A stretch of 64,000 bases of DNA. It comes from Botryllus schlosseri (taxonomy: Eukaryota). Shown here one piece after another: positions 1-55,000 of this stretch (positions are counted from its first letter, which is position 1; every line of letters begins with the position of its first letter). The notes under the pieces were generated by a model. The model saw nothing but the letters and a program-made list of their open reading frames with translations. It ran no database searches and was not told the DNA's origin. The stretch spans positions 16,368,001 through 16,432,000 of the forward strand of contig CM119379.1 in the NCBI GenBank assembly GCA_051294905.1, in the 5' to 3' direction. The translations under genes and the position numbers were made by a program.

Positions 1-901
1 AGTCACCTTTTTCGTATGACTTGACTTGACTCGAGTCACTTCGCTAAAATGACTTGACTTGACTTGACTCGGCGTATCAGAAATGTGGATTGACTCGTGA
101 CTCGGAGCAAAATTCACGAGTCAATTTCAAGTCATCAAGTAATCGGCATTGATAAAAATCACTTTATCTTGCTTATGTTCGGATTGTTCGCGAAAAGGTG
201 GTGTAACCCGTGAAAGTGAACAATCATTCAATGATTGTGCGTTTTACTGAGCCTCCATTGTTCTCTCACAAATAAATTGACTACTAACGAAGTGATCGAA
301 GCCTACATAGTACGTTGGCGTAAACTAGTAATAAGGTCATTTAACAGCAAGATATATATTTATGTTCTCTGTTCTTACCTCAACCAAACCTCTTGTTTTA
401 TTGAAATTGAAAGATGATTTAGTTTCTATACTCATACACCATTGGCGCAGACTCGATTTGTATCATATCAATATTTATAAAGGGGTAATGTATTGCATCT
501 TAGCAAGTCGTTTCTCTATTCTCTATTTTGACTGGTGACTAATAACTGAGGCTATGCAATTACTTACATAGTTCAACAGTTCTACGTATATGTGAGCGAT
601 ACAACGCCGTATTGCGTGTATATTAACTTTATATTCGTTCATCGATTCAGAATCAATGGCCACTCAATCTGTAATTCAGACAGCTAGCAAAACGCAATGA
701 CGTAATCATGCTTCCTACTTCGAAAAGGCAACTTAACTTGAATTGTGACTTGACTCGAGACTTGACTTGACTCGACTCGACTTGACTCGAGTCACCTCCA
801 AAAATCTCGAGTCACCTTCGAAAATCGATTGACTTGACTTGACTCGAGTCAAAATGTGCAATGACTCGTGACTCGAAGGTAGTGACTTGATCCCAACATT
901 G
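1..901. mobile_element. GACTC/CTCGAG-rich hAT-type MITE sequence (CAGTGTTGGGA-terminus subfamily); left end outside window
   Basis: Blocks of GACTTGACTCGAGTC at 1-140 and 733-900 ending in TCCCAACATTG (891-901), the same terminus as the copy at 32288-32735. Confidence 0.7.
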
Positions 902-1110: not shown

Positions 1111-4100
1111 TTCAGTAGAATCCGTTGTCACGGCGTGATTCAGTTCTCCCACAACCAATTTGCAAACGTCGCATTGAGTGCTCTCCAGTCTTACGTCGGT
1201 AGCAGCAACCTAACAAAGCAGAGCAATGAACATAGGTAGGAAAAGCACGTCATCAGAGGTTCAAGATGCATCTTTGCGACCAAAGCAAAATGATTAATGA
1301 CACTACAAATATATCAAATCCTTGAAGATATAATAAGTTACAGTGATACAGGAGTTATTTCAAGCGGTTTTTATGACAATTTCATATATAAAAGTGAAGC
1401 GAACTAATCCCAAAAGTACTTCTTACTGTTTTCAAAATCGCAAATACAAAATTGAGTAGTTTTATCTAAAACGAAGTGGAAGCAGTATAAAAGCAATACC
1501 ACTTGATTAAGTAGTGCAAGAAACCAAACAATATTTGGGTGCTCGGAAAACTTAGAAGTAATTTGTTACTGACCGGTGACCAACTCTGATTATGAAAGAC
1601 ATTGCTGGCTAAGATTTCGAACATTCACCTGAACGCAAAGCTTCAATTGAACGCAAACGACGTCAGGAGCAAGCTCTTTGATTAATAGCTGTACGATTTG
1701 CGGACCGTACTCTTGTACTAGACTGTCGCATTCGTCTTTGATTGAGCCCGGCAAAATGCTGCAGACTTTTTCCAATGCAGCTTCAATTTCAGACTGCGGA
1801 AAATGTCATATAAGATATTTGGTAATGCTAACATACGGTAAGTCAAGTGGTCGTAGCCCCATAACGTCAATAACTTAAATTGAATCAGGAATGGCTATTC
1901 AAGATAGTTTGGCAAGAGGATTCAAAATTGCCCTTTTTACTATTTCATGTTGTCCTGAATGAAAAACAAAACGCACGAAATGTTGTTCAATTTTCAAAAG
2001 AATATGAATTATATTACATCAGTGTTCACACAGCAAATATTTCTATCAGTAATTCCTCTTTATTGTATAAGAGAGTAACTGAATAGGCTGAATGATGTGC
2101 ACGAAGCACACGACTCCGGAAATGTCAGCGTCAACCAGACCAATAACACGTGCTGTCAGGATATCTGCGGGAGGCTCAAATATTCTTTATCGGATAAGGT
2201 ATCCAAAATGATAATTAAGAAGCACGAGTACAATGAACAAGCAAGGACATTATAATAAGAGAATAAAAAAAATATCTGCTTCACCTCTGTTGAATCCTTT
2301 GACACCAGTTGATCAAGTTCTTGAGCTACCAATTTACAGACATCACATTCCGTGCTATCTTGCACTTCAGCCACTACAACCTATTTAAAAAATAAAGACC
2401 GTATTAACCCAAGAAAATAGTGTAATGCTGGTTTTTGTGATCACCTCTGTATTGCTTCCACCGCATAGCTTCAATTCTTGGCAAATTGTGTCAGGAGCAA
2501 GTTCTTTCACCAAAAGTTGAACAATAGCGTCGCCGTATTCACTCACTAGACTCTGGCACGTAGACTTGATAGATGACGGCAAAATGCCACACACATCATC
2601 AAGCGCTTTTTCGATTTCAGCCTGCGGGTTCAAATACAAATATTGCGCAGACTGTCTCAAATAACTTTGTATTTCCATATCTGATTGAAACATTTTTAGT
2701 CTGATTCAACAAATACGAAGGCATAATTCAACGCTGTTATTTTTACTTTTGATCGGGTAACATTTAACAATACTTTGTATGTACTGAACATATTCCTCCT
2801 GTCCTTTGATGTCTTTGTTTTTTAATTATCCATACAGAGAATAATTTCAAGGATTCCTACTTTTGACCAGAAAACGCCATCAAATATTTGACAATTTCTC
2901 CGAATACCCAAAGGGCACATTTTTTTTCTTTCTAGTCAAGCAATGAAAAAAAGTCCTTACCTCCGTGGAATCTTTCGACACCAATTGATCAAGTTCCTGA
3001 GCTACCAATTTGCAGACATCACATTCCGTGCTATCCTGCACTTCAGCCGCTATAACCTATTTTGAAACAAACACCATGCTAACCCGAGGGACTTGTGCAC
3101 CGTGATGGTTTTTGCGATCACCTCAGTACTGCTTTGACCGCATAACTTCAATTCTTTGCAAACGGCATCGGGAGAGAGCTCTTTCACCAAAAGTTGAACA
3201 ATGAGGTCCCCATATTCACTCACTAGACTCTGGCATGTAGACTTGATGGATGACGGCAAAATGCTACACACATCCTCTAGTGCTTTTTCGATTTCAGCCT
3301 AAATGCCAATAAATGTATCAAGTCTTTGAGTAAAATAATTTATTAATATTTAGTATAACATCATAAGAGCATGAATGACGGGGAAAGTTGACATAGATTA
3401 CTTTTCTGCGACCGAGAAGAATATGATGACAGTTCTATAGCACATTCAATAAAATTTGGCATTTTCGATAATACCTATATCATTCCACTTTGTGACAATG
3501 CTGCAAGTTTATCACGACCTTACAGCAATGTTATTTCCACTCATTCTTTGTGCTACATGTTTTATATGCTGTGATACGATCAATCATGCTTTAGTACTTC
3601 CACGGTGGAAAATATTATCAAAATTATAATATTGTTGATAGATTAAGTCTTAGCGAAAAGGGGTGTATGATTTAAGTACTCGATTAATCATCAGATACTA
3701 CTCAGCTCAATTCATTACAATTAATCCCCGTAAAGATCGGAGTGCTCAAATTATTGTGTAAGTATCATATGTGAGTAACAGTGGATAATACTTGACTAGT
3801 TCTGTCGACAGACGGCGGGACTCATTGCCATCTTATCATGTAGAGCATACTACAAATTCACAGATGAGAATAATTCTCTCCTTTTCCAACAACGATAGAA
3901 GAAAGTCCTTACCTCAGTTGAATCTTTTGACACTAGTTTATCGAGCTCTTGGGCAAGCAATTTGCAAACATCACATTCCGTGCTATCCTGAACTTTGAGA
4001 GCTACAACCTGTTTGGAAACACCATGTTAACCAAAGAAAATTGTGCATTCTGGCCTCTGTGATCACCTCAGTACTGCTTTCACTGCATAGCTTCAATTCT

Positions 4101-7100
4101 TGGCAAATGGCATCAGGAGAGAGTTCCTTCACCAGAAGTTGAACAATGAGGTCCCCATATTCACTCACTAGACTCTGGCATGTTGACTTGATGGATGACG
4201 GCAAAATGCCACACACATCCTCTAGTGCTTTTTCGATTTCAGCCTATAATATGATAGATGTGTTAATCGTCTGTGATGAGTCACAACAAGTCTGATTGTT
4301 CCAGACTATTTTTAAACTATGTACATGTGGAGTTACAAATGCATTATTTTCTATATCTAATTGAAGAACCATATCTGGTTTGAGTAATACCGGTACTTGC
4401 TCTATTTTCTCTAATGATTATACTGTGTTATTGACTACTGACTTTGACTACTTCTGTCATAGATACATACCGTATAACTATATACTGTATAGTTGTATAC
4501 ATCTCTTAGTTCTGTGAACTCATGCCTCCTTAATTATCAAGAAGCGTTGTAATCAAGTCACAAAGCTCCAAGTCACAAGTCAATTTCATTTTTATAGTCG
4601 AGTCAAGTCGAGTCATTTTCAATTCACCACCGAGTCAAGTCCGAGTCCAAGTCAGTGGGCAGAGGGTTGAGTCCGAGTCATGGTATTATGACTCGAGTCC
4701 GAGTCCAAGTCAATGTGTTGGCTGCTCAGTTTCCAGTTAAAGTTTTGTTAAACGCACTTTTTATAACTTTGTTTGGTGATATCTAAGGCAAGTTTTTGTT
4801 GCACTAAAATCGCGAGAATGTTGCACTTAATTCTAACAAAAATTGCAGTAAAAATCACTCATTTACATTTTCACGCAATATTTGATAAAAGTTGCAGTAA
4901 AATTTGACATGAAAACCAGAGAAAAAGTTGCAAAAAGTTGCACTATAAAATCCCTCCAAACAGCTAACACATCATAGTACATAGATTCCGAGTATCTAGG
5001 AAGCTGTCGGAAGATGTATAAAAAGGTTGCAAATGTTGCAATAACTTGCCCTAGTGACATCAAATGGTTTTCATTTTTAATATATTCATTTCTCTCACTT
5101 TTAGCAGTTTCTGGTCGCATTTTCAAATACCAGTACTAAAAGACGAATTCGCAATAGTATGGTTAAATTACTCTTCTTCAAAATTACAATGAAATGTTGG
5201 TGTTGGCCATCTGGGTATCAGGTCATCAGAAAATCATGACTCGGGTCATTACAACCCAGTTTTGGAGACATTATTTTTGCAATGTCTATCTAGGCTAGAC
5301 AATGATAATTTACAGACATTTCTAGTTCCTAATCGATCATGATTTTTAATCCCCAGATTTCTCAATATACCCGATGGACGAGATTATATTCTTTATAATC
5401 CAGTAATGATAAACGGATAGATAATACCTCCGTGGAATCCTTGGAAATCAATTTATCAAGTTCTTGAGCAAGCAATTTGCAGACATCACATTCCGTGCTA
5501 TCTTGCACTTCAACAGCTACAACCTATTTTGAAAAAAAAACTGTCAACCAAAGAAAATTGTGCACCATAATGTGTTTTGTGATCACCTCAGTATCGCTCT
5601 GACCGCAGAGTTTTAATTCTTTGCAAACGGCATCGGGAGAGAGCTCTTTTACCAAAAGTTGGACAATAGCGTCACCGTATTCATCAACCAGACTCTGGCA
5701 GGTAGTCTTGATCGATGACGGCAATATGCCGCACACACCCTCCAATGCTTTTTTGATTTCAGCCTACAATATGATGAATGTGTACCTTGTCTGTGATAAG
5801 TCACAAAAGTCCAGGCCAGGCTGTTCCAGGGTAATTTTTATGCTAAGTAAAGATGGAGTTCCAAATTTATTATTGAAGAAACTTTCTGCCTGGTTTGAGA
5901 AATACTTGCTCCATTTTTCCTCGGCAGGATCATATTGTTATTGGAAAATACTTTGGCTACTTCTATGGATGCGCTACTGTATAGTCGTATACATCCCTTA
6001 GTTCTGTGCACTCATTCCTAGATCATCTTGGAGGCATTATTTTTGGAATGTATATCTAGGCTAAAAGTTGATAATTTACGGACATTGGCAGTTACCATTT
6101 CACCATGATTTTTAATGCAGAGATTTCTCATCATCCCAGTAGGACAAGAGAATAATCTCTATAATGTAGCGACGAGGAACAAAGCCATTACCTCCGTGGA
6201 ATCCTTCGAAATCACTTTATCAAGTTCTTGAGCAAGCAATTTACAGACATCACATTCCGTGCTATCTTGCACTTCAGCAGCTACCACCTTTATGAAAAAT
6301 AAACACGGCCTTTACCCGAGAAAGTTGTGCGGCATGTTGTGCTTTGTGATTACCTCTGTGTAACTTTGACCGCATAACTTCAATTCTTTGCAAACGGCAT
6401 CGGGAGAGAGTTCCTTCACCAAAAGTTGAACAATGAGGTCACCGTATTCGCTCACTAGACTCTGGCATGTAGACTTGATGGATGACGGCAAAATGCCGCA
6501 CACATCCTCTAGTGCTTTCTCAATTTCAGCCTGCAAGACGATAAATGCGTACATTATCTCTGATAAGTCTTCATAAGACCGTTGAAATCTAGTTTCAAGC
6601 TATATGCATGTGGACTCGTGGAGTTTCAAAATGAGCCATTTTCCGAGTCTAATTGAAGTGATTTTCATCTTGTTTGGCGAGAAACCTACTTGTCGTATTT
6701 GCTCGCAACAGAATTGAACACAGTTATTTCTACTTCTATGCGAGTAGCGGTGAACGATACTTTGTGACTAGTTCGTCTACGGAAACTTTTCTATTTTATG
6801 GTGGAACATTATTTTGGAAGTATTTATAAATCAGTTCAGTTCAGTGATAATTCTAACATAAGAATTTTGACAAAATGCACAGATAGGAGAGTGTCGCAAT
6901 GACCAAGTTTCAACAATGGCAATAATCCTAATTATATTTGGATTTTCAATTCATAATTGTGTCGTACCATTCAGTGATCCAAACACTGATGCTGGATTTT
7001 GAATGATTTCGAACCTTGCATTAATCGGAAGATGTCGCTGAATTAAGTGCAACTGGTGAATGCGTGTAGCTGTGCCATTGGTTTTTTATTTTGATTATAG

Positions 7101-10100
7101 ACAGGTATGCTTGGGCAAAGCTCAAGTGGGGTAATCGAAGGGATTAGGCAACGAAATAGCTAAAATATATATGTGGTACATGCTACCATTGCTCATGATT
7201 ATGTTCAATCAAATATTCATCTGGAAATTTTTTCGCGGCCCTCGCAATTCAAGTCCAGTTCATAATTATCTGTGTATAGCCCAATTCCATATTTGAGAAG
7301 TGTCTTAACATTCATAAATTCTTCCAAACAACAGGGGTACCTAATGTCCTTTAGGAGGATTTTTCCTTTTTCAGTAAGTCAAAAAGTCCTCCTAGGACGC
7401 CTAAATCAGGGTTGCCATACTTCCGGAATTTCCCGGACATGTACGGAATTTCACTGAAAAATCTGCGTCCGGGAAGAATTTCTAAAATATGCATAAATGT
7501 TCGGAATTTTGAAGGCTTGATGCAGGCTCGAAAGTTTTTCGTAAATCAACATAAACAATACTATTTTCAAGCAGATTTATACTATTCAAAATTATTCTTC
7601 GCGACGCGCGCGAGTTAATGCAACGTATAATGATATTAGTATGGGCACCATGCACCACCCTCTCCGAAAATTGCAATCAAAAGAAATATAAATAACCATC
7701 ATTTACTGAAATAAGTCTGATTGTGATCGCCATTATAAGCTAACGGTATATTCCTAGAGTTGATTAAGGCCGATTGGATGCTTCAATCACAGACAGTGGT
7801 TCCAAATCTTGGGGTCGTACGGCTTTATCTGGCGATCGCGATGATCTTGAGCTTTGCCACGGAGCATTTTCGAGTGGGAAATGAAGTCGCGGCCATAAAA
7901 GGTTGGAAATCACCGGATGTGCAACCTGCTGGTGCATTTTATAGTAGTCTAATATATGGAAGAATCAATATTATTGACAAAATTCATAGATAAAATTTAA
8001 TAGCCAAATGCATATCGTATGTGCCGAACAAGTTACATCGACTATCCTATGGTGGGCCCAAGATCAGTGCTTTTTTGGGCGGAAGGAGGGGGGAGGAGAA
8101 AAAAATGTTGTTTCGGATATGATTAAAACACATATACCGATAGCCCACCGACCTAACAGTATAGCAGGACTGCCAATCACAATCCTGACAGTCCAGACAC
8201 GGCCCGTCAGATGATTTCAGCCGGCCCGTGGAGAAGTTTATTGCAGACCCTAGCAAGTAGCAATCACCAGAGCTCACATTACAAATGGCCTAATTCATGA
8301 CCTATGTTTCACTCCATTCCTGTATAGTGTGTACAGTCGATGGGCAATGCTTTGCCAGCGTGACGTCATATTGACGGTCAATGAGTTACACCTCATTTTA
8401 AAATCCGCTGGTGGGCGCTAAAAAGAGTCCGGAATTTGCTTCACAAAAATATGGTAACCATAGCCTAACTATCCTCTTTTTTTTTGGAAATTCGTTCTCC
8501 TTCATAGCTTTGACAGCCAGTCCAATGAACAGGATGAACTACAAAACGGCATAAAATAAGTGAAATGTGTAATGCGGACGTTCAAGCGGGTCATTGAGAT
8601 TGCAAACATTCAGGTTGCAAGTCATAAAAAATTTGAGAACCACTGGCCTAGAACATGTAAATACTAATCATCCACACTGAATCAAAAGTTAGATTCTTTT
8701 CTTTTTGGAGATTGATACTCTTTTATCAAATTCACAGATGAATTAAAACACTTGCTAATTGAAGAATCATAAAATGAAGTCTATACCTCAGTTGAATCTT
8801 TCGAAACCAGTTTATCGAGCTCTTGAGTAAGCAATTTGCAGACATCGCATTCTGTGCTATCTTGCACTTTAGAGACTTCGGTCTTTTGCATTGAAAAAAA
8901 GCACCATGGTAAGCCAAGTAATTGTGCACCTAAGTGTCTTTTATCATCACCTCTGTATTGCTTTGGCCGCACAGTTTCAATTCCTGGCATATGGCGTCGG
9001 GAGAAAGCTCTTTTACCAAAAGTTGGACAATGGCATCACCATATTCACTCACTAGACTCTGGCATGTTGACTTGATGGATGACGGCAAAATTCCACACAC
9101 ATCCTCTAGTGCTTTTTCGATTTCGGCCTGCAAAATCGTAAAAGTCGGTAAGAAGATTACTGAAAGTCATAAAAATGTTGCGGTAATAAGCAATGGACTG
9201 ACTAACAAATTAATGAAGTTTTCTAGTCTTGCATAAATGTCTATATTATATGATGCTGTTTAAAAATAAGGATTTATTGATTACATTGACTGACTCTAGG
9301 TAACAATAAGAAATCTCGGCCCTAAACAGGAATAAAATCATTTCTGTGACCGCCCTATTTAGCTGTGTTTTCAATTTCTTACGCCATATGATAGTATTGA
9401 GCTATTTTAATTGAAAGACACCATTCTGTTGCAGCTGAAGTACCAGAATATTCTCGCAATAATAACATTTAAAATTTGAAATCATTTTATCAGATGGGGC
9501 CAAAACACAGATAGGAGAAATCAGTTCATATCATGAGCCCAAGTATTTCAAAACGGTTACCTCTGTAGAATCCTTCGATATAACTTTGTCAAGTTCTTGA
9601 GCTAACAATTTGCAAACATCGCATTCAGTGCTGTCCCCAACTCTGCTGTTTACTACCTGTTTTTCATAACAACAAACTAGTGGAAACAAAGAAATTGTGC
9701 AAGTACAGCCAGTGCAATTCACCTGTTGAGTATTCTGTCCACACAGTTTCAATTGTACACATATCACATCGGGTGCGAGTTCGTTGACCAGCATTTGGAC
9801 AATCTGAGGTCCGTATTCCTCGACGAGACTGTCACATTCGGTTTTGATGGCGGCTGGCAAAATGCCGCAGACATCCTCCAAAGCTTGTTCTATTTCGGAC
9901 TAGAAAAAATTCAGTTTGAAAAGGTTTGCATCGAAAGGTTATAAATTTTATTGCACCATAAATCAGGTACGGCTTTCAAAAGTACATTCATGATAAATGT
10001 TTATTGAGACACCAAGAACTTTTTGCGTGCCACTTATCAAGAGCTACCGGCACGGTAAAGGAAATAAAACGGTGTTGAATTCAAAACCAAATGGATAATT

Positions 10101-13100
10101 ATGACGCAATAATGTTGAATTTATGAATAACATCAATGAATCAATGAACATAGCAACAATGCAGCGTATAGCAACATGTAGCGTAAAACAGTAATGCGAG
10201 CTTGAGACACAGATTATACAACTAACGTAGCAAATGTAATATTACAAAGGAACAAGAAACGGTGTTTGATAGCAAGACGCACAACAGCTACACAAAGGCA
10301 ACTAGTGGAAAATATTTTGGTTTGGACCGGATTGTTAAGTTTAATGAAAGTCGATTCCAATGCTGTTAAGTGGAATGGAGATCTGGCCTTGGACAGATAG
10401 GTTGGTCATTGGACAATGTGCAGGTATTTGAGAGAAAGCCACCCGAGGACAGTCAAGATTTGATTGAAATGGTGGGAGTGGATATTTTTCCAGTACCAGC
10501 TGAGTGGTCGTTCAATACCACACGCATTATGCAACTATGAATTGAATGATTTATAGTCCATGGAAAATATTAATAAATCCCTTTAGCGCATATCATACTA
10601 CTTCCATCGAAGATCAGAAAATTGTAGGAAAAGTATCAATTACATGTACTTTTTGACTTGATTCAATGAAAATTCCATGGTTGTGCCCAATTATATCACT
10701 GGTGAGCGGAAAAAATCAGCTGGCACGACCAGCCATATAAATATAACTCACTTCAGTTGAGCTTTTACTGACAAGACTGTCAAGTTCTTTTGCAACCAAT
10801 TGGCATACCTCGCAATCTACGTTCTCCTGAATTATCTGAATGAAGCAAAGTTCAATGTCTCAATTAGAAAATAACTGTGATGGTTAACAAACCGGGTTTG
10901 AATCTTTCCGATCGGTGAATTCCAGCTCCATCAAGACTGGAAGCAAAGCGATTTCTACCTCGGTCATGTGTGCGGTACAGAATTCCAGAGAAGTGCAAGC
11001 CTCTGCCACGTCCTAACAGAATTTTATGGGAATTTTAGAGGTAGCAACGGTCCAGCACAAAAAAAATTGTTGATTCGTGAATTCGTACAAAATCAAGATT
11101 ACAGAATAAACGTAACAGTACTTCAAATCGCATTAGGATAAAGACTACCTCATAATTACTGTGGCGCAGATTAAAAACAAACATATCGATTCTAGATGAA
11201 GTATATCCTTAACCATGAATAGTTTTAATATTTTAAGCTTCAACAATTAAACAATTGCAAAGAAGGGCATTTCAATTTATTCGCTTGTATTGACGGAATC
11301 TAGTGATCAACTTTTTAGATCAATAATAATGATATAATGTGAAGGACGAGGTTGTTCTAAATCTCAATTTTTTCAACATAACCAAGCAATTTCCCAAGTG
11401 ATTAAAATGGAATAGGGGATTCCCAAATTTGCCTTCAATCCAATTCAATTTATTGCTAATAATTTCATCATTTTAATACACCACAAGACTGCGATACAAT
11501 GAAAGATAGGAAGGTGTCAAAACGACTTAGAGTAGTCGATATCAGACAACCCCCTGGCCTACGTGATGTAAAAAAAGTATTCATGCACACTGAATGAAAA
11601 GTTAGGGAGATGATATAAAAGGACAGGTGATAAAAAGGTGGCATGTGTCGGAAGGCGAGATCGAATACAGTTACACCCCTACACTAGAGTGTCTCGAGAG
11701 GAATAGACAGTTGCAATGAAGCAGAGGTTCCCAAACTATGGATCATGCCCCCTTTTTTCATTAGGGCCATGAAAAAATTTATCATCTCAAAGTCTACCAC
11801 TGTAATTCAATAAATTAAAATTTATTTAAAATACTACTACCACAATAATCTACTTCTTGAGCTTGAGTTCAGTTTACTTACTTTCTTTTACTTTTCGATT
11901 TAATAATATTATTTCAAACATTACAAAATGGCTTGGAAGTAAGATGAGTTATCATAAGTTATCTTAAGCATCTACATGACAAAGGAGTGTGCAAGTCAAA
12001 ATGTGTTTTATGTTCCACAGTTCTGCCTAATGAGTCAAAGAAACCTGGAACGCTGAAGGTTGAAAAAATACTGGGGGTCTTGATTTTTCAAAATTTTCAA
12101 AGGGGGTTAACGTGTAAAAAAGGTTGGGTACCCCTGCAGTTAAGGCTGGTTGTGATGAAGGCGATTCTCAAAGGGAGGTTCCCAAATTTCACAAAAGTAA
12201 TCCAAGATTAAAAAAAAAAACTTTCAAGATATTCTAAAAATTATTTTAATGTATGCTTTTCAGATATGCTCTTTGGAGATACGCTACAAATTTTCAAACA
12301 CAAACTTGAACGAGAGGTACTCACCATTTGTTCCAAAGATTGCCATAGCATTGGCAGGTTCTTCTTGAGCAGGCTGGCACACTGGGCAGTAAAACACACA
12401 ATAATTGCAAAGTACTTTTTGTGCTTTTGAAATTGGAAGGATTGCTGATGCTGATGATCGTCACTCGGAATGCCAAGTGAGTAATTTAAGGAATACTAAC
12501 ATGTCAAACATATTATAACGAACAATCAAGTAAGTCGATAATGATGGGTTTGAAGTCTCGAGCACAGCGGGAGTTATAACTGAATTATGCACACTGCACA
12601 TCACACTGCAAAGTGTACATTCGGTGACAACGGAACATATCTCTGATGTATTGATTAACCACACTAATTTCGCGACCAAATAGACACAGTTCAATAAACT
12701 GAACGTATATATGTATTTTGCAGGCAACCATCAAACATTAAACCGTGTCATATGACCGTACATTTACAAAGTATGCACATATTCTCGTCATGCTAATCGG
12801 AGAAAAATAAAGTACAGGTATATCATGAAAAATATCTGCTTGAGAATGCATGTTCAGAAGAAGAATTGAAACAAAAAACATCATAGTCGAAGAAATGTGC
12901 CATGATTGTGGTAACACAGTAGGCCTACCCCCTTGTGCAGAGTTAAATTACTAAAAACGCTGGACTACACAAATATGTGACTTTAACAGACCGCATATTT
13001 GCTTGCTTGCATTAATTGTAACAGAGCACACAGGGCGATTTATTAGAATTGATTAGAGAGAATACACATACATACCAATATGTGGATGTGGGCTTATTGA

Positions 13101-15517
13101 ATAATGTAAGTATTCGATCCTACATGAGTAGATGGATATGAAGTTATAAATGCACTATAAGAGGGCTGGATTACTGGTATCAATGTTTCATCAGTGAAAT
13201 TTGTGACATCTTCAGTCCCTTGAATCAACAAAAGGCAACAACTAGCAGTAAGCATAAACTCCACACTCCACATACATATACTGATATACATATGATAACG
13301 CTCTTGAGCTTTCGAAGTATATTATAAGGAGGTGATCAGTGAGAAAGTATTTCTACTTGGAAAATGTAGACTACTCAAGTAGATGTCTCAACTTGAAGTA
13401 ATTAGTCATGTTTTCATTCACACTATTTATACCTATATGTTTGAACCAATTTTCAGTACTAGTTACTTCATACTTCATCTGTAACTATTCTCATTAAACA
13501 ACTTACGTATGGTGACTCTAATTACACTCTAGATATGCTACCTTTGAGGGGATTTGCTATCACTATGTTACTTCTATTGTAGACACTGGCATTAACAACA
13601 GTCTCCACTGAACATTTGTACCACAAATATTGAAAATGATACACTGATTTATGTCCGGATTTCAAAGCCCACTGAATGCCTCCTACCATTTGCTTTAGTC
13701 CTTCTCCGAGCTGATCACATTCTTTGATAATTTCACCATTGATTTTATCCTACAGGAACAATGAACGTGTTATACCGGTTTCATCACAGTGCAAATTAAA
13801 CGTTTACCATAGATTCGCTGGCCTTCAGTTTGGCTTGTACGTCTGTGAAAAATGACTTGCAGTCCATGCACTGGTCACCAACAATCTGTTCAGAGAAATA
13901 ACATCATCGTTTCAAGTGGAACACGTTTCCACTCAAGAGAAACTTCCTACCTGTGACAGGCTGTTGCACATTGTCAAATCTGTGCATATGGTACTAACTT
14001 CCTAAAAAGGACAAAGAGTTTCAAGTAGCTTACAGGGTAGGCCTACATAATTTTCTCGATGACAAATCAAAATCGGTTTCACTTACCATCTGAGATATAC
14101 CGTCCAAAACTTGTGGAAAATACTGGCTCACCATAGATTTGCACTGTGAATGCAAGATAATATCATGTATATATTACAAGCCAAAACGCGATATTATCAT
14201 ATGTATAACATAAAAAATATATGCTTACCAGAGGACCCATTCCAGAACCAAATGTTTCACATTCAGTGTCCAGCATTTTGGTCCAGTCATTCTAGAAAAC
14301 AGTTACGATGTCCTTGCTTGGTGACTTTGATTTCATGATATCGATTAGTGTGGCGGTGTGGCTTAACCCAATAGGATTATTTTTAGGAATACGTTGTCTA
14401 CAGAATGCACAATACGGGTGTTCAAAAATGACTATTTTTCTCCAATCGTACTGGCTACTTGATAAATTGTTAGGTTACCTAATTTAAGCCTACACACCAA
14501 ATTTGATTCAATTCCAGCCAGTAGCCGCATTGCTACAGGAGAAGAAAGTTTCTATTTATTATATAAAAATAAATGACAAAAAAGTTGAAGATTAAAGAAT
14601 CGGTCACCGTAAATACTATTTTATTCGTAATCCAAAATTTTTCGGTGTGGATTATGAATAAAATAGTATTTACGCTGACCAATTATTTCATTATTTATTG
14701 TAGTGATGCCCACCGTTAATACTATATTATTCAAATCCCAATTTTTCGACGGCAATAACTCCAGTTCCATTGGTTGGAATTGAACCAAATTTGGTGAACA
14801 TCGTTTCTATAGACAACCTAACATTTTCATGGGGTGAACAGAGAATTTTCAAATTTTTTGTTATTTATTTTTAATTAATGAATAGAAACTTTCTTCTCCT
14901 GTAGCAATGCAGCTATTGGCTGGAATTGAACCAAATTTGGTGTGTAGGCTAAGTTAGGTAACTTGACAATTTTATCAAGTAGCCAGTACGATTTGAGAAA
15001 AAAAAGTCATTTTTGAACAGCCTCAATGCACAATTTCAACAAATCGACAGATCCACTTCAAAACTAAAAAACTATGCCTAAGCGCCTAGCATATTACTTA
15101 CCACCACTTTTCTATTGTTCATCACAGTGTTTTTAAAATCTTTCATAAAAGCGGTACAATCGGAACAGTCGGATCCCGCATCAAGTGGATAAGCGATTGC
15201 CCCGCATACTACTGTAAGACAGAAGCATAATATTAAATATTTGAATCATAATATATTTCAATGCTATCCTAAACACGATCAAAGTTGAGAAGAATTGATC
15301 ACAATAAACATCTTAAAATATTGGTCATTGAATTCAGTGGATCATCCACTCCGAGGCTTTACCAAACCATTGATTTCATGAACACAGCCAATAGGCTTGC
15401 AGCTTTCATTTTAGTTCATTCATATAATACAATGTAGGCTACACATCGTTTGAATTATCTGTTATTATAGTTCATACCCAAGGCAAGAATAACGACGCTT
15501 AAATCCCGCGTCTTCAT
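1111..15517 (-). CDS. PSAP: Prosaposin-like secreted/lysosomal poly-saposin precursor: signal peptide plus >=10 SapB domains; 3' end lies left of the window
   Basis: 26 GT-AG coding exons in consistent phase (5'->3'): 15478-15517 (MKTRDLSVVILAL, signal peptide), 15102-15211, 14229-14291, 14087-14143, 13951-14001, 13808-13885, 13687-13749, 12325-12381, 10959-11012, 10752-10826 (or -10835), 9723-9899, 9561-9656, 8951-9127, 8787-8882, 6354-6530, 6192-6287, 5587-5763, 5428-5523, 4067-4243, 3913-4008, 3122-3298, 2961-3056, 2445-2621, 2285-2380, 1629-1793, 1111-1209. About 941 aa lie in the window. Each domain has the saposin six-Cys pattern (CxxC...C...C...YG...C.....C). The symbol denotes family; strict orthology is untested. 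Confidence 0.9.
4542..5259. mobile_element. GACTC-rich hAT-type MITE (CAGGGTTGTAA subfamily) in a prosaposin intron
   Basis: Degenerate left TIR AAGCGTTGTAA at 4542 and right TTACAACCCAG at 5249-5259; internal similarity to 32860-33336 and 34308-34793; absent from the paralogous intron at ~6000-6050. Confidence 0.8.
7388..8645. mobile_element. Cluster of hAT-type MITE fragments inflating the 2.2-kb prosaposin intron
   Basis: hAT-like termini CAGGGTTGCCA (~7407), CAGTGGTTCCAAATC (7794), TTGCAGACCCTAG (~8241) and TTTGAGAACCACTG (8632-8645); no matching TSD pair found. Confidence 0.5.
14414..15024. mobile_element. Foldback/Mutator-like non-autonomous element with ~175-bp TIRs and 10-bp TSD
   Basis: Arms 14414-~14590 and ~14855-15024 are inverted copies, flanked on both sides by AATGCACAAT (14404-14413 and 15025-15034); inner hairpin at ~14602-14680. 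Confidence 0.85.
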
Positions 15518-18436: not shown

Positions 18437-18828
18437 CAGTGGTTCCCAACGTGGGCGATATCGCACCCCAGGGGGCGATTTAGCGGTATAGGGGGCGAAA
18501 ATGACGAAGGGGGCGATAGGGGGCGAAAATGGACAAAGGGGGCGACAGGGGGCGAAAATAGCGAAGGGGGCGATAAGGGGGCGATGAATCGTTAGAACGG
18601 CTATATTGGAGTCAAGTCGGAGAAATGACCTTTTTTTTAGTCAACCCACGAAAAATTGGATGCTAAAAAGTAAAATTCGACATCGAGCCGCAAAGTTGAC
18701 TTTTTTTTTTAGTCAACCCACCGGTTACAGTTTGTATGCCCATTTTTCGGTTCACAGAATTTGAGGGGCGATGATCGGTGTAGAACTTGAAAAGGGGGCG
18801 ATGGGTCGAAAAAGGTTGAGAACCACTG
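18437..18828. mobile_element. hAT (Charlie-like) MITE with GGGGGCGA internal repeats
   Basis: TIRs CAGTGGTTCCCAAC / GTTGAGAACCACTG; perfect 8-bp TSD GTCTAGGC (18429-18436 and 18829-18836). Confidence 0.92.
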
Positions 18829-39714: not shown

Positions 39715-41040
39715 ATGTCAGTGAAACGAGCTGTTAAAAGATCGCTACCAAAGAAAACTCAGTTAAACCACAGAAAAAAAGGCAATCGTGTCTACGACGA
39801 TGACATAGCCAGCGATTCTGATGAGGAATTTATCAACGACAAATCCGTCGAGGAAGACTCTGATTTTGAGGAGACGGCGCAAGAGAAAAAGCTACGTTTA
39901 ACGAAGCAGTATCTGGATGAGCTTAAAGAACTCCAAGGGGACGAAGAAGGTGACGCAGTTGGAGACAAACTCCAGGAAGATATTTTGGAAAACGCTGGGC
40001 GACTCAGAAAGCAAATAGCAGATAGATGTGTTCAACCTACGTCTGACGATCTCTGTGTACTGCGAGGTCACAAGCTGCCGATAACGTGCTTGGTCCTCAC
40101 TAGTGATGGTAAAACTTTATTCACAGCGTCGAAAGACTGCTGTATCATCAAGTATGGCGTAGAGCAAGGAAAGAAATTGAATAAAATTGTCGGCGGGCAC
40201 AGTCGAGATTCGGGAAAGCATCACACCGGTCATATTCTAGCCCTCGCTATTTCAACGGATAGCAAATTTCTTGTTTCTGGCGGTGCGGATAAGTTGATTC
40301 ATGTGTGGAAAGTAGAATCTTGCGAACACATCCACCGCTTTCAAGGGCACCGAGACATCGTAACTGGGCTTGCGTTTCGCATGAACTCCCACCAGTTATT
40401 CTCAAGTTCTTACGACAAATGCGTGAAAGTCTGGGATCTGAATTCGATGGGATATGTGGAGACTTTATACGGCCATCAGGACCAGGTACAAGCTTGCGAC
40501 AGCCTCACGAGGGAGCGGTGTGCTACTGCTGGCGGTAGAGACGGTACTTTACGGATATGGAAAATCGTTGAAGAATCCCAGCTTGTCTTCAACGGCCATC
40601 ACGGGTCGATAGACTGCATTAAGTTGATTAACGAAGAGTACTTTGTGTCGGGATCTGATGATGGGTCTGTTTGTATTTGGAGTGTTATGAAGAAGAAACC
40701 CATAGCTACAGTTAAAAATGCTCACCCCGGTGTAGATTCAACAAATCCTTGGATTACATCGGTAACGGCATTGGTAAATTCAGACTTGATCGCTACTGGA
40801 TCGTCAAACGGGGTCGTTAAAGTGTGGAAGTGCGGTGCCAAATTTTTATCGGTTCAATGTCTGTTTGAAATACCTATCGTAGGCTTTGTTAACAGTCTCC
40901 AGTTTTCGCCAACCGGGGATAAATTGTTCATCGGCGTAGGCCAGGAGCACCGTTTGGGTCGGTGGTGGCGCATCAAAGATGGTCATAATTCTGTTGTTAT
41001 CGCTAAGTTATTTGACGCTGCAAGCAACGACCAGTCATGA
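39715..41040 (+). CDS. RRP9: U3 snoRNA-interacting WD40 protein RRP9 (U3-55K), 441 aa, single coding exon
   Basis: Uninterrupted ORF; basic/acidic N-terminus, ETAQEKKLRLTKQYL, WD40 repeats, C-terminal GQEHRLGRWWRIK motif; polypyrimidine acceptor TTCTTTTTCTGCAG ends 52 nt upstream of the ATG. Confidence 0.96.
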   Translation: MSVKRAVKRSLPKKTQLNHRKKGNRVYDDDIASDSDEEFINDKSVEEDSDFEETAQEKKLRLTKQYLDELKELQGDEEGDAVGDKLQEDILENAGRLRKQIADRCVQPTSDDLCVLRGHKLPITCLVLTSDGKTLFTASKDCCIIKYGVEQGKKLNKIVGGHSRDSGKHHTGHILALAISTDSKFLVSGGADKLIHVWKVESCEHIHRFQGHRDIVTGLAFRMNSHQLFSSSYDKCVKVWDLNSMGYVETLYGHQDQVQACDSLTRERCATAGGRDGTLRIWKIVEESQLVFNGHHGSIDCIKLINEEYFVSGSDDGSVCIWSVMKKKPIATVKNAHPGVDSTNPWITSVTALVNSDLIATGSSNGVVKVWKCGAKFLSVQCLFEIPIVGFVNSLQFSPTGDKLFIGVGQEHRLGRWWRIKDGHNSVVIAKLFDAASNDQS

Positions 41041-52011: not shown

Positions 52012-55000
52012 TCAGCTACGGTAAGTCTTGATAGCCTTGTCGATTTGCTTTCTGCATATCGGGCATTGCCGAATCGCTTGCGTACATTCCATGCAGCAGC
52101 ACATATGCCCGCACGGCATAAACACCATATCCGCTTGATTTGAGAAGCATATCTTACAAAGGCCCTCTTCTTGCATTTGAGTCACCGCATCCTGAGAAAA
52201 GAGAGAGAAAATTGGAGATCCCATTTTGCTGCAAAGACTTGGTGAGTCGGAAACCAGGCTACGACAACTAAACCACGGAAGCAGTTTGATTATCTGTCCT
52301 GACATGTCGATACATAATATATCATACGCGTAAGTTCATCGACACTAGGGACATATCTCATCATTGATGTATCAACATTTACAGACGATAAACCTAATAA
52401 ACTGATGATTTGATATGATTTGAAGGCTTTGACAAAAAAGGAAAAAATAAAATGCGACCTTTTTCTTGGCTGTGTATATGCCTGATGACATGGCATACTA
52501 TTTTCACTGGGAATTTCAGCAAATTTTAGAAAAGTTTGACAGCTTGAAGGGTATTATCCGCTCATCGAATATGTAATGAAATTATTATTATTATCGTGAT
52601 GCAACATGCCATATGATATCAAATAGGACGCGGGAAATTCTCCTGTAGAAATTCCATTTTTGTGCACAAATTCAACTTTACTACAGACAGCAGCACACCG
52701 AATAACCCATACCTGTAGAGACGCGTTGTCTTTCACATCCACGCTGCTGCCCATTGCTCCCAGAAGAGCTAAAAAATAAGATAAGACATTAGATATGGAG
52801 CAAGAACAGCCAAGTAGGCTGGCTAAAGCTACACCAACCATAGGGTGACTGCTTACGCATATACCATTAACACGGATGAACAATCGAACATACCTGAACC
52901 GTGCACAGCGGTACTGGTCGCTGGAGTACTTTCATACATTTCCATAGCTTCATCTTCGTCGTCGTCGTCAGGAAAAAAATTTTTGTTCCCTCTACCTCTT
53001 GGTGCGCTCCCTACGGTAAAAGAAGACATTCCATCTAAAGACAATATTCCTCACTAATTCAACATCAAACGATACTCCATCCATGTGCTATGTCTTTTGA
53101 GTAGAAATAGAAACCGTAAAACTGAAGATCACTCCCTAGGTAGTTGGAAGGACTAGATTTGGAGGCATCATCGGAAGTTGTCAATAGTTTTTCAAACTGT
53201 AATATTCAACTTTGTGACCGGCGGCAATGTCTGGTCGGACTGTGTCGTTAAAATAGGTGCCATTATGAAAATTTTTGAATTTTTTTAGAAGTTGAAATAG
53301 TCTCAAAACATCACCCCTTAACTGGTGCGAAAAGCAGGCAAACCTACTCAAATATTCTAAAAAGTAGAAGTACTTTCTTACTGACCATGACCGCCTCTGC
53401 ACAGAAGACACATAACGGTCATTTAACCGGTATACACAGTCGAGAAGTTTGGATTACGGGTTTGAATGACCAAATTTTGCAATCGAAACCGCAGAATATT
53501 CGTAGTTTTCTAATCGACAGCAACCGCTTTCAATCAAAGTAGCTACAGACGCAGAGAAACTATCACAACAATCTAGCTAGGTAGGCAGCTTTAAATTGAG
53601 CTGCTTTGTGGTGACCAATTTCATACTTCATTTTTTCAAATTATAAAAATTTGAAAAGGCTATTGTGATGTATACGAATCAAACATACATGATGATGATG
53701 ACTTGTCGGTACCCCCAATGGCAAAAGCAGCATTCGTGGCCCCTGTCGGCATCTTTGCTTGCGTCGATTCCTCAGTTATCTGTCTCTCCCTGTCCATGAC
53801 ATCGTTCAGTAGTTCCGTCATCGAGTCGTAGATATCTTCACTGTTGGCTTGTTTTCCCGAAGCTAATTTGTCTTCCAGCAATCCTTCCACCTGCACATGG
53901 ATTTAGATGAGTCAAATCATCGTTGAATTAGTATGCGGATAATCTATTAAACAATATGTTATTTATTTAATTGATTATTTAATTCAAATTTTGCAAGCAA
54001 AGTCATGTTGAGGTGGCAACTCATGCAATATTGTTCTGTTTTGTCCAGATGTAATTAGTGACCTATTCTTGAAGTAACTACTATGACAATATTATCATGT
54101 TTTGTTCAATATTCGAAAATGAAAATAGAATTGTGACAAAGAAAAATAACATTTGACAAGGCAAGAGTCCAATCTCTTGAAAACAGGAGAAACTGACATT
54201 GCTACATAATCCGATACCATCACACGCATGCAGAAAGCAAACTCACAATTTTAGCATCGAATCCCATGAATATGATACTTTTTACGATGTCTGAATTCTT
54301 CATCACGTTTTGTATATGCTCCCATCTTTTTCTTTTCTCCTCCTGGTAAGAGAGGGAGATTAAATTTCGGACTTGAAATGGACAAACTTACAAACTCAAG
54401 ACTTGTATGGATTTTGGTGGGGACGGCTTTCAGATCAGTCGATTATGCTGGACACTAATGCTTAGTCGATACTTGATCAGTTCAAGTGAATTGAATACTA
54501 AATGCTTCAAAGCAGAGGTGGTATTGGTCAAACTTTAAAACTCATTGGTCCACATGAAGATAGCAACTGGTAGCACTTTACCATCGTCCGTAACCAGAAG
54601 TGGTCAAAGTAGTTAGCCTTGCTACTCAAGCAGGGGTATAATTTGCACTGTAACTTTTACTCAATTCCAAGTAAAAGTAGCCATTACCAACACGTGCCAT
54701 ATCTATTCGAATGAAAGTAGAAAAAAGGTCCGAAAAGAACTCAAGCAAGTACTTTCAAAAAGCAAGGTCAAGGGATCACATATTTTTGGCAGCGGTGGTG
54801 GCTACATTCCCAAAAATCTATTCAGTTACAATGGCGCACTCGACCCTCACGGCAATTTCAATCAGAAAAGTGGTGCAAAATTACCGTGAAACGACAATCT
54901 GCTTTTCAAAATCCAATATGTTAAAAGTAAGTAGTTTTGTCTAAAAAAACTTACTCTCGGATCGATAATCGTAAGAGTAGCTGCGGGTTGATTCGAGCTG

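What the first reader, a model, noticed from the sequence alone, without database searches (positions are those of the whole stretch)
1111..15517. Poly-saposin precursor with at least 10-11 saposin domains built by tandem two-exon duplication
Seen: signal peptide, two divergent SapB-type domains (each over four small exons sharing 63- and 57-nt middle exons), then 8 complete near-identical SapC/D-like modules and the A-exon of a ninth. The gene continues past the window edge. Known: vertebrate prosaposin has four saposins between small SapA-type prodomains; no N-terminal prodomain is present here (the signal peptide runs straight into YPLDAGSDCSDC). Inference: a lineage-specific amplification releasing many copies of one lipid- or membrane-binding saposin, serving digestive/lysosomal dosage or innate defence.
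Basis: partly seen in the sequence, partly recalled or inferred. Interest (0 to 1): 0.75.

Follow-up and report, generated by a model that had tools for sequence, protein, structure and literature searches.

The report
Giant 29-domain prosaposin-like gene
The window holds the first third of one 41-kb sea-squirt gene that strings 29 saposin (lipid-binding) domains into a single 2,611-residue secreted precursor.

Summary
Confirmed and extended. On the minus strand, a signal-peptide exon (ATG at 15517) leads into two four-exon saposins with 63- and 57-nt middle exons.

RNA contigs from two runs splice that exon across the window edge to its partner and on into further saposins. My full model has 73 coding exons over 41.35 kb (contig C9:16342163-16383517). 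It encodes 2,611 aa: 29 six-cysteine saposin B domains and one C-terminal SapA domain. There is no N-terminal SapA.

The repeated copies are not an assembly artefact. Domains D2-D7 are 91% identical in protein but only 86% in DNA (dS 0.81, dN/dS 0.06).

The many-domain state is not lineage-specific:
- Styela clava has a collinear gene with 31-40 domains.
- Proteins with 12-32 domains are annotated in molluscs, echinoderms, arthropods, a cnidarian and a sponge.
- This genome has a second such gene on contig C16, with SapA at both ends.

What is lineage-specific are arrays within the gene (D1-D9 and a four-fold two-domain unit) and the near-total loss of N-glycosylation sites.

Function is inferred only: an acidic, saposin C/D-like activator precursor cut up in acidic compartments. 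A parallel first-stage note of this scan (s1-240591) covers the same stretch.

The parts
15478..15517 (-). Coding exon 1: ATG and the first 13 residues of the signal peptide (phase-1 donor)
   Evidence: Sequence read; exon table (40 nt, GT donor). No RNA check of this junction.
13951..15211 (-). Saposin N1, four exons (15211-15102, 14291-14229, 14143-14087, 14001-13951; 110/63/57/51 nt). It holds the end of the signal peptide and a six-Cys domain.
   Evidence: Nearest Styela domain is Sc_05 (SH-aLRT 93).
10959..13885 (-). Saposin N2, four exons (13885-13808, 13749-13687, 12381-12325, 11012-10959; 78/63/57/54 nt)
9723..10835 (-). Saposin D1: A exon 10835-10752, B exon 9899-9723
   Evidence: HMM hits; AG/GT and phase 0; Pfam SapB_2 4.6e-14.
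8951..9656 (-). Saposin D2: A exon 9656-9561, B exon 9127-8951
6354..8882 (-). Saposin D3: A exon 8882-8787, B exon 6530-6354 (2,256-nt intron)
5587..6287 (-). Saposin D4: A exon 6287-6192, B exon 5763-5587
4067..5523 (-). Saposin D5: A exon 5523-5428, B exon 4243-4067
3122..4008 (-). Saposin D6: A exon 4008-3913, B exon 3298-3122
2445..3056 (-). Saposin D7: A exon 3056-2961, B exon 2621-2445
1629..2380 (-). Saposin D8: A exon 2380-2285, B exon 1793-1629. Both flanking introns are confirmed by RNA contigs.
   Evidence: Joints 4994>5486 and 4408>4828 on L007; Pfam SapB_2 6.5e-14.
1111..1209 (-). A exon of saposin D9. Its B exon lies outside the window at C9:16366962-16367138.
   Evidence: RNA joint 2338>4311 on L007, a 1,972-nt intron with CT..AC ends.
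1..900 (.). Dispersed repeat inside the A9-B9 intron. It is not part of the coding gene.
   Evidence: More than 40 copies at 83-92% identity across the genome.

Best explanation
This is one minus-strand gene of a stolidobranch (Styela-like) ascidian, spanning C9:16342163-16383517 (window 15517 down to about -25837). It has 73 coding exons and encodes 2,611 aa.

The product belongs to the prosaposin family. Its order is: signal peptide; two four-exon saposins (N1, N2); nine two-exon saposins (D1-D9); four more four-exon saposins (M1-M4); thirteen two-exon saposins (D10-D22, including a two-domain unit repeated four times); a last saposin; and a C-terminal SapA domain.

Every coding exon after the second is a multiple of 3 nt and sits between phase-0 introns. 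Units can therefore be duplicated or skipped without breaking the reading frame, and that is how the arrays grew.

Inferred mechanism: the precursor enters the ER and each 74-residue core forms three disulfides. The conserved C-terminal saposin and SapA region directs it to acidic endolysosomal or phagolysosomal compartments. There, proteases cut the 10-19-residue linkers and release about 29 acidic (pI about 4-4.8) saposin C/D-like peptides of roughly 9 kDa. These lift lipids out of membranes for hydrolases. The amplified near-identical copies supply dose.

Shown here: the anatomy, the domain family, part of the splicing, purifying selection, and orthology to Styela. Inferred: targeting, cleavage and lipid-activator function.
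For: Anatomy:
- The model is a continuous frame with no internal stop; every intron is GT-AG.
- 29 of 29 domains carry the six-Cys pattern; 28 have a 73-74-residue Cys1-Cys6 core, and the last differs (7-residue Cys3-Cys4 gap).

Family:
- Pfam SapB_1 and SapB_2 match the modules, and SapA scores 4e-8 on the penultimate coding exon.
- The genome-wide SapA scan finds that same site.
- A profile search of PDB sequences is best for human saposin C and D.

One transcript:
- Logan contigs of two runs, from two studies, carry eight exact joints with CT..AC ends: A8-B8, B8-A9, A9-B9, B9-M1a, M1a-b, b-c, c-d and M1d-M2a.
- All eight fall at my predicted splice sites.
- One contig of 2,756 nt begins in A8 and runs about 1.9 kb beyond M2a.

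Collinearity with one annotated Styela clava gene (LOC120347581): N1~Sc_05 (93), the M1-M4 group with Sc_07-12, D10~Sc_13 (99), D22~Sc_39 (99), Last~Sc_40 (91).

Real, maintained copies:
- D2-D7 have dN 0.048 and dS 0.81 (dN/dS 0.06). The Y-type unit has dN/dS 0.05.
- Intron lengths differ from 339 to 2,256 nt.

Acidity: pI is 4.05-4.8 in 25 of 29 domains, as expected for lysosomal saposins by general knowledge.
Against: - Only 8 of 72 introns were checked against RNA. The 5' exon junction and everything downstream of M2a rest on splice-site logic and on collinearity with Styela.
- The RNA runs are 'RNA?' by guess, and only contigs were available for them.
- Two bulk RNA-seq runs, sampled at about 6%, showed no reads on the saposin exons. 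Expression is therefore restricted or low in those samples.
- There is no N-terminal SapA, and 27 of 29 domains lack any N-glycosylation sequon; only 3 NxS/T occur in the whole protein. In the paralogue on C16, 7 of 11 domains scanned have a sequon, and in Styela 18 of 40. Trafficking or folding may therefore differ from canonical prosaposin.
- No tool here tests cleavage, localisation or lipid binding.
Confidence: 0.6

Rival explanations
1. The locus is two or more adjacent saposin genes, for example one ending somewhere after M2 and another carrying D10 to SapA, rather than one 41-kb gene.
For: Only the stretch from A8 to M2a was seen spliced together. My search for this species' own annotated or transcript-derived protein found nothing.
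Against: - The most likely boundary (B9 to M1a, where the exon architecture changes) is bridged by an exact spliced joint in two runs.
- The 2,756-nt contig continues about 1.9 kb further.
- I noticed no candidate second start or signal-peptide exon while modelling, though I ran no dedicated search for one. All exons are internal, phase 0 and AG/GT-flanked.
- The domain order is collinear with a single Styela gene model.
Confidence: 0.1
2. The protein acts unprocessed, as a giant secreted multi-saposin lipid binder or carrier (in blood, tunic or gut lumen), rather than as a precursor of free lysosomal saposins.
For: - It lacks the N-terminal SapA and almost all N-glycosylation sequons found in the paralogue and in Styela.
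- Linkers are short (10-19 aa) and acidic, and none of the linkers listed contains a dibasic pair.
- Vertebrate prosaposin is also secreted intact (PMC11587001 abstract).
Against: - The last saposin and the C-terminal SapA are conserved with Styela (Last~Sc_40). That this region mediates lysosomal sorting in mammals is my own knowledge, not tested here.
- Amplifying one exact peptide under dN/dS 0.06 is most simply explained by released identical units.
Confidence: 0.2
3. It is an antimicrobial or pore-forming saposin-like polyprotein, as in naegleriapore or amoebapore-like precursors, released for innate defence.
For: - Multi-saposin precursors cut into antimicrobial peptides are documented in Naegleria and proposed for Dictyostelium (PMC11542183).
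- Independent amplification of arrays in each lineage resembles immune-effector evolution.
- The X-type domains D15, D17 and D19 are near neutral and two of them carry 2-3 His (pI 6.9-7.7).
Against: - 25 of 29 domains are strongly acidic.
- The closest solved relatives by sequence are saposins C and D. Granulysin scores only 2.7e-5.
- Purifying rather than diversifying selection acts on the copies.
Confidence: 0.1
4. The repeats are an assembly artefact or a decaying pseudogene array.
For: Tandem repeats are prone to mis-assembly.
Against: - Copies differ by 7-17% in exon DNA and have introns of different lengths.
- No stop or frameshift occurs in 7.8 kb of coding sequence.
- dN/dS is 0.05-0.11 in the three amplified groups (D2-D7, Y, X D15/17/19).
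- RNA contig pieces on these exons match with 0 differing letters.
Confidence: 0.01

Closest known systems
Styela clava LOC120347581 (XP_077973904.1, 3,236 aa; longer isoform 3,938 aa), annotated 'uncharacterized protein'
   Same: - Closest relative found, with tblastn HSPs up to 76% identity.
- Same family and the same succession of four-exon-type saposins, two-exon-type saposins, last saposin and C-terminal SapA.
- 1:1 domain pairs at the array borders.
- It also carries species-specific arrays (Sc_24-34: 11 copies, several identical).
   Different: - Styela starts with four SapA-plus-saposin units that are absent from this gene.
- It has 31-40 domains against 29 here.
- Its amplified array sits late in the protein, not between the second and third four-exon saposins.
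- 18 of its 40 domains keep an N-glycosylation sequon, against 2 of 29 here.
Second poly-saposin gene of the same genome, G000:C16:~17256000-17300000 (+)
   Same: - Same exon types (four-exon and two-exon saposins; last saposin in three exons; SapA).
- About 20 saposin starts.
- C16_k groups with D22 and Sc_39 (SH-aLRT 99).
   Different: - It has SapA at both ends, and its N-terminal SapA-plus-saposin units match the Styela N-terminus at 38-46%.
- Most of its domains keep the sequon.
- It lacks the D1-D9 and X/Y arrays.
Vertebrate prosaposin (PSAP)
   Same: - Signal peptide, tandem saposin B domains with six Cys, and a C-terminal SapA.
- The modules are most like saposins C and D.
   Different: - Four saposins against 29.
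- An N-terminal SapA is present in PSAP.
- By my own knowledge, each human saposin is N-glycosylated.
Drosophila Saposin-related (Sap-r)
   Same: Invertebrate prosaposin homologue with more than four saposins: eight, each with six Cys. Loss of the gene gives lysosomal storage (PMC5319729).
   Different: Eight domains against 29, and most fly domains carry a glycosylation site (PMC5319729).
Giant poly-saposins annotated in other invertebrates
   Same: Same domain family and the same tandem principle, all without a described function. Examples:
- Aplysia XP_035826565.1 (2,813 aa); its 2,808-aa cluster representative P0001 gave 29 matched stretches
- Elysia marginata GFR60011.1 (31 matched stretches)
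- Physella (27) and Bulinus (26)
- Apostichopus (22) and Acanthaster (19)
- the beetle Ceutorhynchus (21)
- Tachypleus 'prosaposin' (16)
- a sponge, a hydrozoan, bivalves and a spider (12-16)
   Different: Only 30-60% identity per domain. Their arrays are presumably independent, but I did not build their domain trees.

Membership tests
Prosaposin / saposin B-type domain proteins | Six-cysteine saposin pattern (C-x2-C ... C ... C ... C-x4-8-C) in each unit | tested here: met
   29 of 29 domains match. 28 have a 73-74-residue core; the last has a 7-residue Cys3-Cys4 gap.
Prosaposin / saposin B-type domain proteins | Pfam SapB_1 (PF05184) and SapB_2 (PF03489) above the gathering score | tested here: met
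   - SapB_2 scores 43-53 bits (cut-off 21) on B exons.
- SapB_1 scores 28.6 and 35.2 bits (cut-off 25.2) on two stretches.
- 19 SapB_2 matches fall along this gene in the genome scan.
Prosaposin / saposin B-type domain proteins | Pfam match for the four-exon-type domains (N1, N2, M1-M4) | tested here: inconclusive
The evidence is indirect: the six-Cys pattern, and the region P0170:590-1400, which covers the orthologous Styela domains Sc_05-12 (and Sc_13), scores SapB_1 1.5e-15 and SapB_2 8.4e-26.
Prosaposin / saposin B-type domain proteins | N-terminal signal peptide | tested here: inconclusive
   MKTRD, a hydrophobic core and AIA before Y look typical by eye. No signal-peptide predictor was available, and exon junction 1-2 has no RNA check.
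Canonical prosaposin architecture | C-terminal SapA domain (PF02199) | tested here: met
   4e-8, 33.5 bits (cut-off 22). Found again in the genome scan at C9:16342287-16342352. The final exon supplies the ...HC....W end.
Canonical prosaposin architecture | N-terminal SapA domain | tested here: not met
   - The genome has only four SapA matches, none upstream of this gene.
- The Styela N-terminus finds nothing in window 15001-64000.
- The signal peptide runs straight into saposin N1.
Canonical prosaposin architecture | N-glycosylation sequon between Cys2 and Cys3 of the saposins | tested here: not met
   Only M4 and Last carry a sequon there, and only 3 NxS/T occur in 2,611 aa.
Canonical prosaposin architecture | Proteolytic release of single saposins in lysosomes | not testable with these tools
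   This needs proteomics or cell biology.
Antimicrobial saposin-like polyproteins (naegleriapore, amoebapore-like, NK-lysin type) | Cationic or His-switch peptides with closest similarity to lytic saposin-like proteins | tested here: not met
   25 of 29 domains have pI 4.05-4.8. Granulysin scores 2.7e-5 against saposin C at 3.9e-15.

The most novel reading that the evidence does not exclude
The C9 gene is a derived paralogue of the ancestral ascidian prosaposin. It has shed the N-terminal SapA units and nearly all glycosylation sites, and it has amplified one acidic saposin C/D-like peptide seven to nine times under strong purifying selection. On this reading it is a dedicated high-dose effector polyprotein, for example for phagocytic or digestive cells, rather than the housekeeping sphingolipid activator, a role the C16 gene could keep. 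The species-specific arrays here and in Styela, together with the giant genes annotated in other phyla, might then be a repeated, convergent way of setting saposin dose by exon-array copy number; I did not build domain trees for the other phyla.
Probability: 0.25. Interest if true: 0.6.

Novelty: new member of a known kind. Interest (0 to 1): 0.4.

Why it matters
This is one of the largest saposin arrays in a single gene, and it comes from a chordate relative of vertebrates, whose prosaposin has only four saposins. Because all exons are phase 0, the gene is a clean example of dose being tuned by exon-array copy number. Old copies (dS about 0.8) are held to nearly the same peptide (dN/dS 0.06), and a related species has its own separate arrays. 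Pairing with a more conventional paralogue in the same genome gives a natural experiment on what SapA prodomains and glycosylation do. The general phenomenon is already visible in public annotations, although I found no paper describing it, so the value is comparative rather than a discovery of a new kind.

Tried and rejected
- Tandem Repeats Finder did not report the array, because the periods of 0.7-2.6 kb exceed its limit. Direct-repeat families and my own HMMs did find it.
- Rfam found nothing in the 5.6 kb around the window edge. The very deep RNA signal there comes from a tRNA-derived SINE, not a known RNA gene.
- A search for this species' own annotated protein, using the Styela C-terminus as query, found only Styela and two sea slugs.
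- A search with a 238-aa open stretch of the distal array found nothing. This says nothing about longer proteins, because of the tool's length filter.
- Raw reads of two bulk RNA-seq runs gave no coverage on saposin exons at about 6% sampling. This is not evidence of silence.
- Literature searches for saposin with ascidian, Botryllus, or multi-domain terms found no description of such giant genes.
- I could not resolve whether the C9/C16 duplication predates the split from Styela. D22, C16_k and Sc_39 form a trichotomy. The C-terminal motifs are mixed: NILDPSFICQ is shared by C9 and Styela, while CTYGPSYWC and AVQHC are shared by C16 and Styela.
- The spliced protein could not be given to Pfam, structure or database tools, because they accept only unspliced references. 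No structure was predicted.

Full report
WHAT IS THERE

The feature lies on the minus strand. The window is G000:C9:16368001-16432000 of a 495-Mb assembly.

Direct-repeat search finds families of 8-9 copies spaced 0.7-2.6 kb apart between 1104 and 10817. Their translations are the two halves of a saposin. The 'A' exon reads ...DSTECDVCKLLAQELDKLVSKDSTE. The 'B' exon reads AEIEKALEDVCGILPSS...KELKLCGQ....

Pfam gives SapB_2 at 4.6e-14 to 6.5e-14 on B exons and SapB_1 on A exons.

- The ATG is at 15517 in a 40-nt exon, followed by a phase-1 intron and then a 110-nt exon. Together they give MKTRDLSVVILALVVCGAIA, followed directly by YPLDAGSDCSDC.
- Two saposins (N1, N2) are each split over four exons, with 63- and 57-nt middle exons.
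- Eight complete A+B modules (D1-D8) follow.
- The ninth A exon is at 1209-1111.

BEYOND THE WINDOW

I fetched 40 kb upstream of the window start. HMMs built from the window's modules find 22 A exons and 22 B exons in strict alternation down to window coordinate -24003.

Between D9 and D10 lie four more four-exon saposins (M1-M4). These are two copies of a two-domain unit.

After D22 come:
- a last saposin in three exons;
- a SapA domain (Pfam 4e-8; the same site in the genome-wide SapA scan);
- a final exon ending ...AFSHCVDHVWDERTIQ and a stop codon.

The full model has 73 coding exons over 41,355 bp (C9:16342163-16383517) and encodes 2,611 aa with no internal stop. Every intron is GT-AG, and every exon after the second has a length divisible by three.

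By cysteine pattern there are 29 saposin B domains, 28 of them with a 73-74-residue Cys1-Cys6 core.

IS IT ONE TRANSCRIPT?

I laid two contig-level runs (guessed to be RNA, from two studies) and two raw-read RNA-seq runs on a 5.6-kb stretch spanning the window edge (L007).

The contig runs show eight joints with CT..AC ends, which are minus-strand GT..AG introns. All eight fall exactly at my predicted splice sites: A8-B8, B8-A9, A9-B9, B9-M1a, M1a-M1b, M1b-M1c, M1c-M1d and M1d-M2a. The A9-B9 intron is 1,972 nt and crosses the window edge. The B9-M1a intron is 1,239 nt.

One contig of 2,756 nt starts in A8 and extends about 1.9 kb past M2a. The window's modules are therefore co-transcribed with the next block, across the point where the exon architecture changes.

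The rest of the chain (64 introns) is not RNA-checked. It rests on splice logic and on collinearity with the Styela gene described below. The raw-read runs, sampled at about 6%, had no reads on the saposin exons.

NOT AN ARTEFACT

D2-D7 are 91% identical in protein but only 86% in DNA. Their dN is 0.048 and dS is 0.81 (minimum 0.36), giving dN/dS of 0.06. The distal Y unit has dN/dS 0.05 and the X unit (D15, D17, D19) 0.11.

The long introns differ from 339 to 2,256 nt, whereas seven of the eight short B-to-A introns within D1-D9 are 58-68 nt (B8-A9 is 419 nt).

These are old copies held to one peptide sequence by selection. They are neither collapsed nor inflated assembly, and they are not pseudogenes.

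WHO IS IT?

A neighbouring intronless RRP9 gene (window 39715-41037) is 71% identical to Styela clava and 56-59% identical to Ciona. Unnamed transcriptome proteins reach 93%. The genome is therefore from a stolidobranch, Styela-like ascidian. I do not name the species.

RELATIVES

A profile of the 22 B exons, run against 1.84 billion representative proteins, gives 3,452 hits. The top hits are giant proteins with many matched stretches. By their public names these are:
- Aplysia californica (2,808 aa, 29 stretches)
- Bulinus (26), Physella (27), Elysia marginata (31)
- Styela clava LOC120347581 (3,236 aa, 32 stretches; isoform of 3,938 aa)
- Apostichopus (22), Acanthaster (19)
- the beetle Ceutorhynchus (21)
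- Tachypleus 'prosaposin' (16)
- proteins with 12-16 stretches in a sponge, Clytia, bivalves, a sea urchin, sea stars and a spider

Nearly all are labelled 'uncharacterized'. I found no paper on them. The literature I could read describes four saposins in vertebrates, eight in Drosophila Sap-r (PMC5319729) and two-domain or multi-peptide precursors in amoebae (PMC11542183).

DOMAIN TREE

I built a tree of 80 domains: 29 from this gene, 11 from the C16 paralogue and 40 from the long Styela isoform. It has 74 columns, so deep forks are weak. I also tabulated best matches per domain.

- The four-exon type is one clade (SH-aLRT 98) holding N1, N2, M1-M4 and Styela Sc_05-12.
- Border domains pair one to one: N1~Sc_05 (93), D10~Sc_13 (99), D22~Sc_39 (99), Last~Sc_40 (91). 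The two genes are therefore collinear orthologues or co-orthologues.
- The arrays are species-specific clades. Here these are D1-D9 (96), X = D13/15/17/19 and Y = D14/16/18/20 (100). In Styela they are Sc_24-34 (99; 11 copies, several identical) and Sc_14-19 (97).
- The best Styela match of D1-D8 is the Styela array Sc_24-34 (55-59%). Both species amplified, or homogenised, the same ancestral module type, but at different places in the gene.

A SECOND GENE

The genome-wide scans place 11 further SapB_2 matches and three SapA matches on C16:17257682-17299089, plus strand. I fetched this region. It contains about 20 saposin starts with the same exon types, SapA at the C-terminus, and N-terminal SapA-plus-saposin units that match the Styela N-terminus at 38-46%.

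Nothing like that N-terminus lies upstream of the C9 gene. C16 therefore keeps the Styela-like architecture, while C9 lacks the N-terminal units. Whether the duplication predates the split from Styela is unresolved.

PROPERTIES

- The whole protein has pI 4.3.
- 25 of 29 domains have pI 4.05-4.8. The X-type domains are near neutral (pI 5.3-7.7).
- Only 3 NxS/T sequons occur in 2,611 aa, and only M4 and Last have one at the usual position. This compares with 7 of 11 C16 domains and 18 of 40 Styela domains. It agrees with the scan's parallel note s1-240591.
- Linkers are 10-19 residues and acidic, and none of those listed contains a dibasic pair.
- By sequence, the modules are closest to human saposin C (3.9e-15) and D (1.7e-14), then A (6e-9), then B and granulysin (about 3e-5).

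MECHANISM (INFERRED)

By analogy with prosaposin (established knowledge, plus PMC5319729 for flies), the precursor enters the secretory pathway. It is delivered to acidic compartments through its conserved C-terminal part and cut in the linkers. The resulting acidic saposins extract membrane lipids for hydrolases.

Amplifying one peptide under strong constraint argues for dose. Loss of SapA and of glycosylation leaves room for an altered route or role. I put about 0.9 on the identity and the single-gene anatomy within what was tested, and about 0.55-0.6 on the processing and lysosomal mechanism.

VERDICT

This is a new member of a known, though unstudied, kind of gene.

Noticed in passing
L007:928-1320 (= C9:16365727-16366119, about 1.9-2.3 kb left of the window start, inside the B9-M1a intron): A tRNA-derived SINE of about 400 nt. 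Its head has box A and box B motifs (GGGGAGATAGTGTAGTGGTTA...GTTCGATTCCCG). The first-pass genome search gave more than 3,000 candidates, and 39 of the 40 scored copies elsewhere are 97-99% identical, so the family is young. RNA depth is very high (about 6,000x in raw reads), with template-switch-oligo sequence at positions 926-928, which marks 5' ends of molecules. There is no Rfam match.
   Followed up: partly
window 1-900: An older dispersed repeat inside the A9-B9 intron, with more than 40 genomic copies at 83-92% identity.
   Followed up: partly
G000:C16:17256000-17300000 (+) (L009-L014): A second giant poly-saposin gene with about 20 saposin B starts and SapA at both ends. Its N-terminal SapA-plus-saposin units resemble the Styela N-terminus, and most of its domains keep an N-glycosylation sequon. 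It is probably the more conventional prosaposin of this genome.
   Followed up: partly
window 39715-41040 (+): An intronless 441-aa U3 snoRNP protein (RRP9 / U3-55K, WD40). It is 71% identical to Styela clava and 93% identical to an unnamed transcriptome protein. I used it only to place the organism.
   Followed up: partly
window 54862-55290 (-): An open frame with a BIR/IAP-like zinc-finger motif (...[31 protein letters not shown]...). It is probably an exon of an inhibitor-of-apoptosis-type gene.
   Followed up: no
window 18488-18584: A G-rich tandem repeat with period 29 and 3.4 copies (87% matches), in a locally GC-rich stretch (GC 0.44, GC skew +0.14).
   Followed up: no
L007 207>843 (window about -2994 to -2358): One RNA contig of run X1 joins M1a directly to M1d, skipping the 63- and 57-nt exons. 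The skipped segment has AT..AC ends. Because all exons are phase 0 this would stay in frame. It may be an exon-skipping isoform or a contig path through the near-identical M3 unit.
   Followed up: no
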